A stretch of DNA of 63,240 nt, filler included, from Octopus bimaculoides (taxonomy: Eukaryota): the NCBI RefSeq assembly GCF_001194135.2. It is 12 parts of 10 records of this genome, joined end to end, with 100 filler letters (N's around TTAATTAATTAA, not from the genome) between each part and the next. Parts side by side here need not be neighbours in the genome. Positions count along the whole stretch, not along the records: positions 5,763 to 10,780 come from NC_068989.1; 11 more parts are not named here. One strand, 5' to 3'. The notes under the pieces were generated by a model, which saw only the letters and a program-made list of their open reading frames with translations, made no database searches and had not been told where the DNA came from. The position numbers were made by a program, and so were the translations under genes. Shown here piece after piece: positions 5,763 through 10,780 of this stretch. Position 1 is the first letter of the stretch, and the number at the start of each line of letters is the position of its first letter.

Positions 5763-5807
<45 letters not shown>

Positions 5808-6054
5808 ATGTGGGTGGAATGTAAATCCAAAGCATACATGAAATTAAATTCATGCACAGACATACACAATTTTACACAACTCACGCATACATCCGCATAC
5901 GATTTTTTGAATGTATTTCTCCGAGTTGAGGCAACCAAGGGAGATAATTCTGTTTTATTTGCGAAAATAGAAAGAAAAAAAGGAAATCGAAACGTGATGT
6001 TTGGCTGGTTGTAAACTTTTGACATGTTTGTAATTATTATCATCAATTTTTTCA

Positions 6055-6250
6055 AATTTTAGCACAAGGCTAGTATTCTTATTAGGTGGTGGTTACTCGA
6101 TTGTGTCGACCTCGGTACTTGACTGTTACTCTATCTTATCGACTCCAAACACACGAAAGTTAAATGTTGAGTTCGATGGGATTTGAACTTCGAACGTAAG
6201 GATCCAAAAGAAATACTGCTAAATATTTTGGCCGATCTGCTACCGATTCG
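6055..6250 (-). mobile_element. SINE family A, degraded
   Basis: gtcgacctcggtacttgactg and gggatttgaacttcgaacgtaag match family A in reverse. Confidence 0.75.
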
Positions 6251-6552
6251 GCCATATATATGCGGATGAAACGGAAACCAAAGATGCTTGAAACAGCCAA
6301 CAGAGTATCATAGATATTTAAATGTAAACACATCAACACATCATTGAAAGATAATTGATAGCAGCATTCGTCCAGTGACAGCATCTCTTCTGGATGTGCT
6401 GTGTTAACAACTCCCATTGATGAGTGCCCCAGTAAATTACCTTTCAGCGGTTTATTTATATGTTAATTGCACATAGCAATAAAACTCGACAACTGTTAGT
6501 AGAATAGAATTCTCTCCCTTGCATCATTTGTTATTTAATATTTAATTACATA

Positions 6553-6915
6553 AAGGCGGCGAGCTGGCCGAAACGTTAGCACGCCGGGCGAAATGCTTAG
6601 CGGTATTTCGTCAGTGTTTACGTTCTGAGTTCAAATTACGCCGAGGTAGACTTTGCCTTTTATCCTTTCGGGGTCGATAACTTAAGTATCAGATGTGTAC
6701 TGAGGTCGATCTAATCGCGTTTGCCTCACCAACTATCGTTCGGAAACCGTTGATGTTTACGTCCCTGTAACTTAGCGGTTCAGTATAAGTGAACGATAGA
6801 ATGTGTACCAAGCTTTACAAAAAGTAGTAAGTACTGAGATCAATTCGTTCGACTAAAATTTTTCAAGGCGGTGCCCCAGTGTGGCCGCAGTCTAATGGTT
6901 AAAACAAGTAAAAGA
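6553..6915 (+). mobile_element. SINE family A head joined to module B tail, CpG-intact
   Basis: Near-consensus head with 12 CpGs in its first ~105 nt, followed by the B tail. Confidence 0.9.
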
Positions 6916-7099
6916 TGTAAGATAAGTATAATGTCTCTACATTATCCAATACAGGTTTCTTTTTTGTTTGTTTGTTTGTTTTTCTTTTCAAGACAGTAAG
7001 GTGTGAATCGAGAAAGGGAGAGACTTAGCTGATATTCCTAGCATATCTATCAAATATGCAGGGAGCTCATTTGTTGACTCTAAATTTTCTGTTATTGCG

Positions 7100-7480
7100 C
7101 TAATAGGCTCAGGTGTGGTAAGAAACTTGCTTCCCAACGACATGGTTTCAGGTTCAGTCTNNNNNNNNNNNNNNNNNNNNNNNNNNNNNNNNNNNNNNNN
7201 NNNNNNNNNNNNNNNNNNNNNNNNNNNNNNNNNNNNNNNNNNNNNNNNNNNNNNNNNNNNNNNNNNNNNTTTGTGTGTGTGTCTGTGTTTATCCCCCCAC
7301 CATCGCTTGACAGCCGATGTCGGTGTGTTTACGTTCTCGTAACTTAGCGGTTCGGCAAAAGAGCCGAAAGAATAAGTACTAGGCTTACAAAGAATAAGTC
7401 CTAGAGTCGAAGTGTTCGACTAAAGGTGGTGCTTCAGCATGGCCGCAGTCAAATGACTGAAACAAGTAAAGGACTAAAAG
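7100..7480 (+). mobile_element. Composite SINE: family C head (gtggtaagaagcttgcttcccaaccacatgg...) + microsatellite/gap + module B tail
   Basis: Head at 7100-7160, N gap, (TG)n, then B tail; same layout at 14870-15250 and 17780-18070. Confidence 0.85.
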
Positions 7481-7828
7481 ACTTAAGATTAATGTGTGTC
7501 TTATTAATTTTTACACTAAGTTTTCTGGAAAGGTCTTACTGCTCATGTACTGTTACATAATTCACGATTTAATCAAGAAAAATTGCAATCATTTATCACG
7601 TGTTACTGGTACATTTATCCGTTCGATTTTAGAAAATTAAAACTAAACAGTTCCAAAGCATGATGGAATGATTTAAAATAAACGTAAGTGAATGAAGTGA
7701 CTCTAGTTTATCTTTTATGACTAGAGACTGTTTCTATGACGTTTTACACAAACATTTGTTTCTATGACACATTGGTTTTTCTTTGTTTTTACCATGGCAT
7801 GCTATTTAATTTTCGAAACGTTTCCATC

Positions 7829-9220
7829 ATGGCAAGAACTTCATATTCTGAAAAGGAATTGTTCACTCGTTTAAGAAGTTCTTCTCCAAGCAGTCTTTCG
7901 TTTCAAGGCATATTCTCGGAAATAAAATCGGGGAAGGTCTTAGGTTATCAACTACAAGTGAAGATAGAAAATGAGCAATTAACAATTACATCTTATTCCA
8001 CAGAAGGTCGTTCTAAAGCAGAAACTATTTCACTATCACATGTTTGCCTGGATATCTTTGATGAAGAGACACGAAGATTTTGTATACATTTTAAAAATGG
8101 CGGATTAAGAGTATTTCAATTGTGTGTCAATAAATCGACGTCTCCAAATTATACCTGGCGAGATCTAGTCACTGTTATAAGACGACTCTCCGTCCGTAAG
8201 GTAAAACCCTTGGTTGGCAAATCTGTTGAGCTTTCAACTCGTATTACTTGCTCGGAAACAGCACCGGGAGCGCTTTTCTCTCGTCATCATATTGATCAGA
8301 ATATTATATTTGAATATTTCTTCGTCGAACTTAATCTCAAAGGTATAGGAATTAATCAGTTGTACCTTGGTCTCACAGACGAGTTTTTTCTTACAGCATC
8401 GCAGACTTTGAATTACTTGACACTTCAAGAACAGATTCCTTTACAAAATGTCACAATTTTTATAATAAGCCATACTTTTCGAAGAATAGGTATTTTTATA
8501 AGAAATGACACTTTCAGAATATTCGAAATGTGTAATTTTAGTGAAAAAGACAAAAACCTGATATACTGGAATCAGCTCGTTGATATTATAAACTTAAAAG
8601 ATCAAGAGGCACCAACCGTTAAACACACATGTTCAGATAAATCCTTATTAACCACTATCCGTTCTAAAGATTCAGGTGTAAACACAGACGGGAATAATAA
8701 CATCTATTTCGGTGATTCAGAAGATCAACCAGATATTGATTTATTAACAGATATTCAATATCTATTTGAACTTCGAGAGGATGAAAGGTATTCTTCAACG
8801 TTTACCGATAAAAAGCCGCAATACTTTGTTGGTGCTTTTTGGAATACGTCACACGAAGCTACTCGCAATTCTATGTTGCGTAAATGGGCATCCTGCCCAG
8901 AAATTCACAAATGTGCTCCAGTGTCAAGGAATATGGTTGAAATGGTGCCTAGTATAACAAAATCATCTTCTTTTACATTTTTAGGCAGTGACAACGAAAA
9001 CTTGAATCTTCACATTCAATGTTCCTACGATAAATTTATAGACGAAATCAACGATAACACCTTGTTGGCCTTGAGTAGAAAGATCATGCTAGTGCAAGGT
9101 TATAAAAAGGATATTAAAAAGGTAAATACCTCTTCATATTCTTTTTATTCTGTTCAGTTGTCTGCACCTTTAACGTGGTTCCACTGTTTATTCCAGCAAC
9201 TGGATGAAAGAAGTGGGTGA
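7829..9220 (+). CDS. Intronless ORF (463 aa from ATG 7829; 494 aa from 7736) with two tandem GARIN/FAM71 (DUF3699)-like PH-fold domains and a low-complexity C-terminal region
   Basis: A 1.48-kb stop-free frame in AT-rich DNA. ATG 7829 has a good Kozak context (catcATGG). Residues 55-151 align to 191-287 at offset 136. Motifs FEYFFVELNLKG, IPLQNVTI, FQLC and YWNQLVDII match my recollection of the GARIN consensus (FESDFIQINRRG...LLPLKFV...LQLC...YWEKLIYLL). The family call is from memory. Confidence 0.75.
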   Translation: MARTSYSEKELFTRLRSSSPSSLSFQGIFSEIKSGKVLGYQLQVKIENEQLTITSYSTEGRSKAETISLSHVCLDIFDEETRRFCIHFKNGGLRVFQLCVNKSTSPNYTWRDLVTVIRRLSVRKVKPLVGKSVELSTRITCSETAPGALFSRHHIDQNIIFEYFFVELNLKGIGINQLYLGLTDEFFLTASQTLNYLTLQEQIPLQNVTIFIISHTFRRIGIFIRNDTFRIFEMCNFSEKDKNLIYWNQLVDIINLKDQEAPTVKHTCSDKSLLTTIRSKDSGVNTDGNNNIYFGDSEDQPDIDLLTDIQYLFELREDERYSSTFTDKKPQYFVGAFWNTSHEATRNSMLRKWASCPEIHKCAPVSRNMVEMVPSITKSSSFTFLGSDNENLNLHIQCSYDKFIDEINDNTLLALSRKIMLVQGYKKDIKKVNTSSYSFYSVQLSAPLTWFHCLFQQLDERSG

Positions 9221-9221
9221 C

Positions 9222-9440
9222 CCCTTCGGTCATGAATGACCATGAGATTGCACCTAGAAAGTTACTCTCCGAGGCACAAATCCGGGCAGGGTTGTTTATC
9301 GAAGACCAGCAGTCACCCATACATATCAGCCTCCCCTCTCCACGCCACTGATGTTATTCAAGGGAAAGGCAAAGGCCGATACAGCTTGGCATCAGTGACG
9401 TCGCAACTCATTTCTACAGCTGATGGAACTGGGGCGACGT
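9222..9440 (-). mobile_element. SINE family D body
   Basis: Reverse complement of 27490-27685 (gaaatgagttgcgac...gctgtatcggcc...ctgctggtcttccataaacaa). Confidence 0.85.
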
Positions 9441-9442
9441 GA

Positions 9443-9950
9443 AATATTATTATTATTATTATTGAGTGAGAGAGCAGTGCATGCCATCAAAGTGACACTG
9501 GGGTAAAATATACGAAGCCCATTATACCCATCATGACTACCTGTCTGATAAGGGTACACCAGGCACATGCATCACAACCATATGTGCGCGACATGGTGAT
9601 CTCATATCAAGATAAACAGCGCATGACCTCGCAGGTGGGGCCCAGTTAGAATTTTCTTCAGATCGAGTAGCTCATTCCGCTCAAAGGGTCCCTGAATAAG
9701 GTTTGTTTAAGGATGTTGAGCAAAACACCCATGTTTCCAAAGGTGAATTATTCAAACCCCAAAGAATTCCTATTAACACATGGCTATGATGCTCCCCAAC
9801 TACTTCTGCTCATGATCAGAGTTGCACATATCGTCAGCCACCAAGGGACATGCTCAACTGGTTAAGGTCAAGCAACTGACAAGCATATCTCTGGTATTAA
9901 ACAGAATATTTGCTGTAGCCCATCCCGCTCAAAAGGTCCCTGAATAAGCA
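9443..9950 (-). mobile_element. Probable LINE 3' end with (TAA)n tail
   Basis: An (ATT)n run followed by about 500 nt of higher-GC non-coding sequence containing an internal repeat (cccgctcaaaaggtccctgaataag twice). Interpretation is inferred. Confidence 0.4.
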
Positions 9951-9964
9951 ACGTGATATAGTGG

Positions 9965-10062
9965 TTTGGGATGGAGAAGAGAAACTGTGTACACGCAACC
10001 CGGTTCGGGAATCGAACTCACAACTTCACGATCGTAAGCTTTAACCACTGAGCCATGCGCCT
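9965..10062 (-). mobile_element. tRNA-like SINE head (family D/E)
   Basis: The minus strand reads ggcgcatggctcagtggttaaagc...gagttcgattcccg, with A and B boxes but no full cloverleaf. Confidence 0.7.
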
Positions 10063-10319
10063 CCACTCCAGCAACTACACCTTATTCAAGATGTTCGCAG
10101 CATCGAGCTCCTTTCTCCACCAGTAATTCCACAAACCACGCTTGGCATTTATCTTTTCGTTTACTTTTACTTGATTCAGTCATTAGAGGGCAGCAACACT
10201 GGTGCACTGCTTTGAAGAATTTTAGTCGAACGAGTCGACACCAAGGCTTATTTCTCCTCTTAAGCCTGCTACTTATACTATCGGTCTTATATGCCGAACC
10301 GCTCAGTTACGGAGATCGT

Positions 10320-10734
10320 GCTTTGTGAATGACCAAGTTCTGAAGACAGTGTACGAGAGATTGTGCTTGGCTGTTGTTCAGCCGTGTCAAATAAGGCTTC
10401 GTCTTCCGCAACAGAAAGTCTTCTTGATCGGGGTTCAGACTAACATTTCTTGAAACGTCTGAACTAGTTTTGTGTCACACGCTCCTTGACAGTTCCCGGA
10501 CCATACAAATCATAAACTTCTTTTGCAGCTATCCTTGCACTCAGTCTTTTCCCTCACAGACAGTGTAAAATGGCTCTAATTGCAATTTTTCAACACTCGT
10601 TATCAATAGTTAAAAAAACCCAAACATAAACAACTCAACAATGATTAGACAAGGTGTGCCAAATTAACGATATTATATGAATATGCAAGTTCTCAAAAAT
10701 CAAGTGGAAATCCGGAAAACTTTTGGCTCAAGCT

Positions 10735-10738
<4 letters not shown>
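10320..10738 (-). mobile_element. Mariner transposase N-terminal (HTH) remnant
   Basis: The minus strand reads LSARIAAKEVYDLYGPGTVKERVTQN*FRRFK (W mutated to stop). Confidence 0.75.

Positions 10739-10780
<42 letters not shown>

What the first reader, a model, noticed from the sequence alone, without database searches (positions are those of the whole stretch)
7829..9220. Intronless gene with two tandem GARIN/FAM71 (DUF3699)-like PH-fold domains
Seen: a stop-free 1.4-kb frame in which aa 55-151 (nt ~7898-8188) aligns almost without gaps to aa 191-287 (nt ~8306-8596) at offset 136. About 23 residues are identical (F56/F192, F60/F196, E62/E198, QL72-73/208-209, E96/E232, I98, L100, V103, RR113-114/249-250, N121, R125, F127, C130/C266, W141/W278, LV). 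Each repeat ends in a W-x-x-L-V helix, as PH-like folds do. Knowledge: mammalian GARIN/FAM71 proteins are mostly testis-expressed Golgi RAB2 interactors with, as I recall, one such domain (FESDFIQ..RRG ... LLPL.FV ... LQLC ... YWEKLIYLL). Inference: this is an invertebrate, domain-duplicated, possibly retroposed relative that could act as a bivalent Rab2 or membrane adaptor in sperm. A mode-2 14-3-3-like motif (RKWASCP, aa 382-388) lies in the tail. The locus is CpG-intact, consistent with a tissue-restricted, germline-unmethylated gene.
Basis: partly seen in the sequence, partly recalled or inferred. Interest (0 to 1): 0.75.

Follow-up and report, generated by a model that had tools for sequence, protein, structure and literature searches.

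The report
First exon of octopus RasGEF gene
The long open frame is the large first coding exon of an already annotated but unstudied multi-exon octopus gene for a Ras-type GTPase activator; it does carry a real tandem pair of PH-like domains, but it is neither intronless nor a detectable GARIN/FAM71 relative.

Summary
The frame is open. The two ~100-residue segments are homologous: Smith-Waterman score 76 against 26±4.4 for shuffles, and hhalign probability 96.9%, E 1.4e-10. AlphaFold2 predicts seven strands plus a C-terminal helix for each. Foldseek matches solved PH and tandem-PH structures.

The window is Octopus bimaculoides LOC106868253 (XP_014768908.1, 1573 aa; UniProt 'Ras-GEF domain-containing protein'). 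Bases 7829-9121 are coding exon 1, which ends at a conserved AAG|GTAAAT donor. The O. sinensis orthologue has 10 coding exons over about 28 kb, with a Pfam RasGEF domain (E ~1e-22) encoded downstream. So the gene is neither intronless nor retroposed.

No family member or isolated repeat hits PF12480 (GARIN), even at E≤10. The exon is under purifying selection (dN/dS ≈ 0.26; no indels against O. sinensis). A tandem paralogue shares the architecture. All close relatives found are octopus proteins or unnamed sequencing-run contigs.

The most likely role is an N-terminal targeting or regulatory module of a REM-less Ras-family exchange factor. This is an ordinary kind of gene with a mildly unusual, lineage-restricted architecture.

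The parts
7829..9121 (+). Coding exon 1 (431 codons) of Octopus bimaculoides LOC106868253, a RasGEF-domain gene. ATG 7829 aligns with the start of the paralogues.
   Evidence: 100% identical to gene-model products P0002 and P0007. dN/dS 0.26 against the orthologue P0001. No indels against O. sinensis and one 3-nt indel against the L001 species.
7799..7828 (+). Possible 10-codon N-terminal extension (MLFNFRNVSI), used by RefSeq isoform X1. It is in frame and open in all three species. Which ATG is used is unresolved.
   Evidence: The further upstream ATG at 7736 is followed by an in-frame stop in the L001 species.
7901..8197 (+). PH-like repeat 1 (aa 25-123 counted from ATG 7829): seven predicted strands plus a C-terminal helix containing W110.
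   Evidence: AF2 model 2, pLDDT about 70-83. Foldseek PH hits. hhalign against repeat 2.
8198..8302 (+). Linker between the two repeats. Low model confidence, with one short helix.
   Evidence: pLDDT 28-56.
8303..8608 (+). PH-like repeat 2 (aa 159-260). It is the more conserved repeat, with near-invariant FEYxFVELNLKG, ASQxL, RIG and RIFEMCN motifs.
   Evidence: AF2. dN 0.038 against 0.067 for repeat 1. 43-45% identity to the paralogue copies, against 23-25% for repeat 1. Sub-threshold Pfam PH-type hits for the paralogue's copy.
8609..9121 (+). Tail of exon 1 (aa 261-431). Predicted mostly disordered or helical at low confidence, with short motifs conserved between paralogues (WNTS, LLR..SCP, MxP..KSSS, QCS.D, GY).
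   Evidence: pLDDT below 40. Invariant columns.
8879..8899 (+). RKWASCP, which fits the R-x-x-x-S-x-P (14-3-3 mode-2-like, basophilic kinase site) pattern. L, R, S, C and P are invariant in orthologues and paralogues.
   Evidence: Invariant columns L360 R361 S365 C366 P367 in P0007 numbering. Binding was not tested.
9122..9127 (+). 5' splice donor GTAAAT of intron 1 (phase 0).
   Evidence: Conserved in three species. The gene models join ...KKDIKK to LWFSQEK..., which is encoded outside the piece. The frame breaks downstream in L001.
8343..8984 (+). Optional internal intron ('exitron', 642 nt = 214 codons) removed in RefSeq isoform X2 and in UniProt A0A0L8HX69. Its removal deletes most of repeat 2 and the conserved tail.
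   Evidence: The acceptor AG is conserved in O. sinensis but lost in the L001 species. The region is under purifying selection as coding sequence.
7563..7798 (+). Conserved upstream non-coding block (putative 5'UTR or core promoter), with three clustered TYTATGAC motifs at 7714, 7733 and 7761.
   Evidence: About 88% identity to L001 but with indels of 7, 11 and 14 nt. Motif count 3 against 0.54 expected in the whole window.
9128..10780 (+). 5' part of intron 1. It carries lineage-specific interspersed-repeat insertions (9203-9446 and 9447-9990).
   Evidence: Segment 9203-10098 is absent from L001. Segment 9447-9990 is absent from O. sinensis. Copies of these repeats are scattered in L002. Exon 2 in O. 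sinensis lies about 2.9 kb downstream, which is beyond this piece.

Best explanation
Bases 7829-9121 are the first, unusually large coding exon of a multi-exon Octopus bimaculoides gene, LOC106868253 (10 coding exons in the O. sinensis orthologue). The gene encodes a protein of about 1570 residues. Its N-terminus, encoded here, is a tandem pair of divergent PH-like domains that arose by an old internal duplication. A mostly disordered, motif-bearing linker follows. Downstream exons encode a RasGEF (CDC25-homology) catalytic domain with no detectable REM domain.

Shown: gene structure, purifying selection, the internal duplication, the predicted PH-like fold and the RasGEF domain.

Inferred: the tandem PH-like module acts as the targeting or regulatory part of the exchange factor. 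It would place or gate the catalytic domain by binding a membrane or protein partner, as PH domains do in SOS, RasGRF and RalGPS. The conserved R-x-x-x-S-C-P site could add phospho-dependent (14-3-3-type) control.
For: - Gene identity. The window is 100% identical to O. bimaculoides gene-model products that continue past 9121 into exons outside the piece.
- Catalytic domain. Pfam RasGEF PF00617 scores E 6e-22 to 4e-25 in P0002, P0007, P0009 and P0010. The closest solved relatives are the catalytic domains of yeast Cdc25, RasGRF1, Epac2 and RalGPS1.
- Gene structure. The O. sinensis orthologue maps as 10 coding exons over about 28 kb. The donor at 9122 is conserved and the frame decays beyond it.
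- Selection. dN/dS is 0.26, and exon indels are none or in frame.
- Internal repeat. Score 76 against 26±4.4 for shuffles; hhalign probability 96.9%.
- Fold. AF2 gives seven strands plus a helix, twice, at pLDDT about 70-83. Foldseek matches FARP1/2 PH-PH, Rtt106 tandem PH and BBS5. Single-domain matches include CERT PH (TM 0.68) and the Exo84 Ral-binding PH (TM 0.65), all at probability 1.00.
- Paralogue. A tandem paralogue has the same layout.
Against: - The fold rests on a shallow alignment of 4-6 sequences and moderate model confidence (mean pLDDT 69, pTM 0.46).
- No Pfam PH family reaches its threshold.
- I saw no cluster of basic residues around the very short β1-β2 turn, so classical lipid targeting is doubtful and the actual ligand is unknown.
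- The RasGEF profile is matched only over positions 1-159 of 181. An insert of roughly 800 residues follows, so the completeness and activity of the catalytic domain are unproven.
- No expression or splicing data could be consulted.
Confidence: 0.85

Rival explanations
1. One reading: an intronless, possibly retroposed, domain-duplicated GARIN/FAM71 relative that acts as a bivalent RAB2 or membrane adaptor in sperm.
For: The tandem repeat is real and PH-like. GARINs do carry an N-terminal RAB2-binding domain (PMC11236154).
Against: No PF12480 hit at E≤10 for the protein, for isolated repeats or for any of five relatives. The frame is exon 1 of a gene with 10 coding exons. The protein carries a RasGEF catalytic domain, which is not part of the GARIN schematic described in PMC11236154 or of GARINs as I know them. 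No GARIN appeared in three database searches.
Confidence: 0.04
2. The tandem PH-like module is a small-GTPase-binding unit that gives allosteric or feed-forward control of the exchange factor. The Exo84 PH domain binds RalA-GTP in this way, and Ras-GTP binds an allosteric site on SOS. On this reading it is not a membrane or lipid anchor.
For: The Exo84 Ral-binding PH domain is among the best single-domain structural matches (TM 0.65). I saw no basic cluster at the β1-β2 turn. Repeat 2 is very strongly conserved between paralogues, suggesting a specific protein partner. RalGPS1, which like this protein lacks REM to my knowledge, is among the closest solved catalytic domains.
Against: Foldseek ranks many lipid-binding PH domains equally well (CERT, ASAP1, PKB). 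No interaction data exist. The Foldseek ranking among PH domains is not discriminating at 10-18% identity.
Confidence: 0.25
3. The ORF is a chance open frame, a pseudogene or a transposon-derived ORF within repeat-rich DNA.
For: The flanks and intron are full of interspersed repeats. No Pfam domain is found in the exon.
Against: dN/dS is 0.26, with no or in-frame indels over 1293 nt, while both flanks accumulate frame-breaking indels. The architecture is conserved in a paralogue at about 32% identity. No transposon family hit was found.
Confidence: 0.01

Closest known systems
RalGPS1/2 (REM-less Ras-family exchange factors with a PH domain)
   Same: A CDC25-homology catalytic domain combined with a PH-type domain. 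That RalGPS lacks a REM domain is from my own knowledge. The RalGPS1 catalytic domain is among the closest solved sequences (E 2e-6).
   Different: From my own knowledge, RalGPS has one canonical PH domain at the C-terminus. Here two divergent PH-like domains sit at the N-terminus and the catalytic domain is followed by an insert of roughly 800 residues. Sequence identity is low, and yeast Cdc25 and RasGRF1 score slightly better.
SOS and RasGRF (PH-containing Ras exchange factors)
   Same: PH domain(s) N-terminal to a CDC25-homology domain. The RasGRF1 and Cdc25 catalytic domains are the best PDB sequence matches. SOS DH-PH appears among the fold hits.
   Different: No DH domain, no REM (PF00618) and no IQ or histone-fold domain were detected. 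The PH-like domains are not recognised by the Pfam PH models.
Tandem PH modules of FARP1/FARP2, Rtt106, Spt16/Pob3 and BBS5
   Same: Two consecutive PH-like domains. These are the best whole-model Foldseek matches (E 3e-6 to 1e-4, probability 1.00).
   Different: Whole-model TM scores are low (0.17-0.31) with rmsd of 13-20 Å, so the relative orientation of the two domains is not shared or not predicted. Sequence identity is 9-13%. The biological contexts are unrelated (RhoGEF, histone chaperone, BBSome).
GARIN/FAM71 RAB2-binding domain (Pfam PF12480)
   Same: An N-terminal position in the protein and a link to small-GTPase biology.
   Different: No profile match at E≤10. This protein has two copies, not one, and a RasGEF catalytic domain. 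All close relatives found are octopus proteins or unnamed contigs.

Membership tests
GARIN/FAM71 (Golgi-associated RAB2 interactors) | Sequence match to the RAB2-binding domain profile PF12480 (DUF3699) | tested here: not met
   hmmscan against Pfam-A at E≤10: no PF12480 hit for the window protein, for isolated repeats 1 and 2 of the window protein and the paralogue, or for P0005, P0009 and P0010.
GARIN/FAM71 (Golgi-associated RAB2 interactors) | Binds RAB2A/B; predominantly expressed in testis | not testable with these tools
   No interaction or expression data were available. These features are described for mouse GARINs in PMC11236154.
PH-like fold superfamily | Seven-stranded antiparallel β-sandwich capped by a C-terminal α-helix | tested here: met
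   AF2 secondary structure gives E×7 plus H for each repeat. pLDDT is about 70-83 in the domains and 69 overall. This is a prediction from a shallow alignment, not an experimental structure.
PH-like fold superfamily | Structural similarity to solved PH domains | tested here: met
   Foldseek against the PDB: CERT PH TM 0.68 (rmsd 4.0), Exo84 PH 0.65, ARAP2 PH 0.61, ASAP1 PH 0.58-0.60, all at probability 1.00. Tandem-PH proteins rank at the top.
PH-like fold superfamily | Match to a curated PH-type sequence family above threshold | tested here: not met
   Only sub-threshold hits, all for repeat 2 of the paralogue: Myosin_TH1 E 1e-3, bPH_3 E 0.017, PH_PLEKHM2 E 0.066.
PH-like fold superfamily | Canonical phosphoinositide-binding basic motif in β1-β2 | tested here: inconclusive
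   By eye, the β1-β2 turn is only 2 residues long in repeat 1 (EIK-SG-KVL). Repeat 2 has a single Lys in ELNLKG (for strand limits). No lipid assay was possible.
RasGEF / CDC25-homology exchange factors | PF00617 match above the gathering score in the same polypeptide | tested here: met
   78.7-94.6 bits against a cutoff of 23.1 in P0002, P0004, P0007, P0009 and P0010. The domain is encoded outside the window piece.
RasGEF / CDC25-homology exchange factors | REM (RasGEF_N, PF00618) domain upstream of the catalytic domain | tested here: not met
   No PF00618 hit at E≤10 for P0007, P0009 and P0010 or at E≤1 for P0002 and P0004. From my own knowledge, REM is absent from some bona fide members such as RalGPS, so this does not exclude membership.
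RasGEF / CDC25-homology exchange factors | Complete catalytic domain (including the C-terminal helices) and exchange activity | tested here: inconclusive
   Only profile positions 1-159 of 181 are matched. Deleting the long insert in silico did not extend the match in Pfam or in the PDB search. Activity is not testable here.
Retrogene / intronless gene | The whole coding sequence lies in one exon | tested here: not met
   Gene products continue beyond 9121 into sequence not present in the piece. The orthologue has 10 coding exons.
14-3-3 mode-2-type site | R-x-x-x-[S/T]-x-P pattern, conserved | tested here: met
   RKWASCP at 8879-8899. R, S, C and P are invariant across three aligned proteins and in the six-sequence family. 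Phosphorylation and 14-3-3 binding are not testable here.

The most novel reading that the evidence does not exclude
Octopods carry a lineage-restricted, tandemly duplicated pair of REM-less Ras-family exchange factors. Their N-terminal double PH-like module would be a previously undescribed PH subfamily, invisible to Pfam, that binds an activated small GTPase or another protein partner and so provides feed-forward or allosteric control. An alternatively spliced exitron (8343-8984) would switch the second PH-like domain and the conserved phospho-motif tail on or off.
Probability: 0.15. Interest if true: 0.45.

Novelty: new member of a known kind. Interest (0 to 1): 0.25.

Why it matters
The result corrects a tempting misreading. 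The locus is not a sperm-specific retrogene of the GARIN family. It is the 5' exon of a Ras-family exchange-factor gene that is already in RefSeq and UniProt as an uncharacterised protein.

The modest new content is that its unannotated N-terminal 260 residues form a tandem PH-like module. In the libraries searched, close relatives came only from three named Octopus species and from unnamed sequencing-run contigs, and the gene has a tandem paralogue. This adds a lineage-specific architecture to the large, well-known class of PH-plus-GEF signalling proteins. It could interest people who study cephalopod-specific signalling genes, but it does not open a new kind of mechanism.

Tried and rejected
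- Pfam on the exon product: nothing relevant. The only hit was DnaG_HBD at E 0.09, which I take as chance.
- phmmer of the exon product against PDB sequences: no hit at E≤10.
- Rfam, tRNA and tandem-repeat scans of the piece: only terminal (TA)n arrays.
- Exact look-up of P0002 in the contig index: not on record.
- Literature search for the four LOC identifiers and two accessions: no paper.
- Attempt to show that the conserved C-terminus completes the CDC25-homology domain. I deleted the long insert in silico, but the match did not extend in Pfam or in the PDB search. That idea remains an inference from recalled SOS sequence patterns.
- Upstream ATG 7736 as the start codon: rejected, because the related species has an in-frame stop.
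- A possible splice acceptor at about 7722: it is not conserved in L001, so I did not pursue it.
- A profile-profile test against GARIN sequences could not be run.

Full report
**1. Checking the observation**

The piece 5763-10780 holds one long open frame, 7736..9220 (+), of 494 codons. The W and LV positions follow after a one-residue gap.

The similarity is far beyond chance. The local alignment scores 76, against 26.1±4.4 for 1000 shuffles of the second segment; the best shuffle scored 52. I also built separate six-sequence profiles for each repeat from orthologues and paralogues. These align with hhalign probability 96.9%, E 1.4e-10, over 97 columns. The internal duplication is therefore real.

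CpG observed/expected is 1.02 in the exon and 1.10 upstream. The RKWASCP motif lies at 8879-8899.

**2. What the frame is**

Pfam finds nothing relevant in the translated frame, and in particular no PF12480, even at E≤10. PDB sequences give no hit.

Searches of the large protein libraries return only four relatives of the exon product. One of them, P0002, is 100% identical to the window over 7736-8344 and 8984-9124, and then continues into sequence that is not in the piece. The cluster look-up names it. It is Octopus bimaculoides LOC106868253, known in UniProt as A0A0L8HX69, 'Ras-GEF domain-containing protein'. RefSeq lists three isoforms: X1 of 1573 aa, X2 of 1359 aa and X3 of 1144 aa.

Pfam detects a RasGEF (PF00617) domain well above threshold in every full-length model (E 6e-22 to 9e-27). 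The closest solved catalytic domains are yeast Cdc25, RasGRF1, Epac2 and RalGPS1. No REM domain (PF00618) is detected.

**3. Gene structure**

The exon ends at 9121, at ...GAT ATT AAA AAG|GTAAAT.
- The donor is conserved in O. bimaculoides, in O. sinensis and in a third, more distant species represented by Logan contig L001.
- Downstream of the donor, the L001 species has a 1-nt indel and the protein sequences diverge. Inside 7829-9121 there are no indels against O. sinensis and a single 3-nt indel against L001.
- Upstream, the 7736 ATG is followed by an in-frame stop in L001. The real start is therefore ATG 7829, which aligns with the paralogues' start, or ATG 7799, which RefSeq X1 uses and which is open in all three species.
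- The O. sinensis orthologue LOC118765226 (P0009, 1582 aa) maps onto its chromosome as 10 coding exons over about 28 kb. Exon 2 lies about 2.9 kb beyond exon 1. This explains why exon 2 is not in the piece.

The gene is therefore neither intronless nor retroposed.

**4. Selection and family**

Between O. bimaculoides and the L001 species, dN/dS is 0.26 (dN 0.069, dS 0.26). Repeat 2 is the most constrained part, with dN 0.038.

A paralogue with about 32-35% identity has the same layout. This is LOC106868254 in O. bimaculoides and LOC118765176 in O. sinensis. It has a first exon of about 1.3 kb that encodes both repeats and the tail, followed by a RasGEF domain. It lies immediately downstream on the same strand. 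Both repeats are present in both paralogues, so the internal duplication predates the gene duplication.

Beyond these sequences, the next best hit of the full-length protein is a fungal Cdc25-type RasGEF at E 3e-5. All close relatives found are proteins of three named Octopus species or come from unnamed sequencing-run contigs. The N-terminal module is thus either restricted to this lineage or evolving fast.

**5. Fold**

AlphaFold2 on the 431-residue exon product with four sequences gave low overall confidence (pLDDT 47.8). Both repeats nonetheless showed seven strands plus a C-terminal helix. A second run on aa 18-266 with six sequences gave a mean pLDDT of 69, about 70-83 inside the domains, with the same topology.

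Foldseek against the PDB returns, at probability 1.00:
- tandem-PH proteins: FARP1/2 PH-PH, Rtt106, BBS5, Spt16, CheF and Dok7 PH-PTB;
- single PH domains with a TM score of 0.58-0.68 relative to the target: CERT PH 0.68, Exo84 Ral-binding PH 0.65, ARAP2 and ASAP1.

At the sequence level only sub-threshold PH-type Pfam hits appear, for the paralogue's repeat 2 (Myosin_TH1, bPH_3, PH_PLEKHM2).

The tail (aa 261-431) is predicted to be mostly disordered. It nevertheless carries short motifs that are invariant between paralogues, including L-R-x-x-x-S-C-P.

**6. Mechanism**

Shown: the module is the N-terminus of a protein with a CDC25-homology domain.

Inferred: it acts as the targeting or regulatory part of a Ras-family exchange factor, as PH domains do in SOS, RasGRF and RalGPS (established knowledge). 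I see no basic cluster around the very short β1-β2 turns, so classical phosphoinositide binding is doubtful. A protein partner, possibly a GTP-bound small GTPase as for the Exo84 PH domain, is a reasonable alternative. The conserved R-x-x-x-S-C-P site may add phospho-dependent 14-3-3-type control; this is pattern-level evidence only.

Whether the catalytic domain is complete and active is open. Only profile positions 1-159 of 181 are matched, and an insert of roughly 800 residues follows. Deleting that insert in silico did not extend the match.

**7. Comparison with known families and novelty**

Membership of GARIN/FAM71 was tested through its defining profile and not met. Mouse GARINs are described as sharing one RAB2-binding domain, located N-terminally in GARIN1B and GARIN3 (PMC11236154). 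The architecture here is different.

The protein belongs to the RasGEF superfamily and the exon encodes PH-like domains, both very common kinds. The gene is already predicted in RefSeq and UniProt, but it is uncharacterised, and no paper cites its identifiers.

What is new is small: the recognition of the unannotated tandem PH-like module, and a REM-less architecture that so far appears confined to one lineage. I rate it a new member of a known kind, with low to moderate interest.

Noticed in passing
window 8343-8984: RefSeq isoform X2 and UniProt A0A0L8HX69 splice out 642 nt (214 codons) from inside exon 1, using G|GTATAG and TTTTTAG|G. This removes most of PH-like repeat 2 and the conserved tail. 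The acceptor AG is kept in O. sinensis but lost in the L001 species (TAA|G). It could be a real exitron or an annotation artefact.
   Followed up: partly
window 7714-7768: Three same-strand copies of TYTATGAC lie within 55 nt, just upstream of the start codon. Only 0.54 copies are expected in the whole window (2 of 200 shuffles reached 3). The cores are conserved in the related species. One copy overlaps a CRE-like half-site (ATGACGT). This may be a promoter or 5'UTR element.
   Followed up: partly
window 7794-7796: An out-of-frame ATG in a strong Kozak-like context (accATGG) lies 35 nt upstream of the main ATG. It is present in O. sinensis. In L001 it reads ATGA, so the ATG is kept but the +4 G is lost. 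It could start a uORF if it lies within the 5'UTR.
   Followed up: no
window 9203-10098: This G+C-richer (46%), CpG-poorer (o/e 0.59) block in intron 1 is made of nested interspersed-repeat insertions. Segment 9203-9446 is absent from the L001 species. Segment 9447-9990 is absent from O. sinensis. Copies of both occur elsewhere in the O. sinensis paralogue locus.
   Followed up: partly
window 6534-6717, 6754-6928, 7272-7490, 10164-10315: Short SINE-sized interspersed repeats. The 6534-6717 element has at least 12 copies in the 44-kb locus L002. Segments 6828-6916 and 10099-10256 both match the same stretch of contig L001, on opposite strands, so they appear to be inverted copies of one element flanking the exon.
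   Followed up: no
window 7161-7269: An assembly gap (a run of N) lies about 560 bp upstream of the start codon, so the upstream region is not fully represented.
   Followed up: no
window 5763-5809 and 10738-10780: (TA)n microsatellites lie at both ends of the piece.
   Followed up: no
L003 27057-29342 (O. sinensis orthologue), outside the window: A single 762-codon exon encodes a Ser/Lys/Glu-rich, low-complexity insert that follows the part of the RasGEF domain Pfam recognises. After it comes a C-terminal Cys-rich segment that is strongly conserved between paralogues (W.C..CG.D.CIYADLP...FQ...Y.FQSQ). That segment may complete the CDC25-homology fold.
   Followed up: partly
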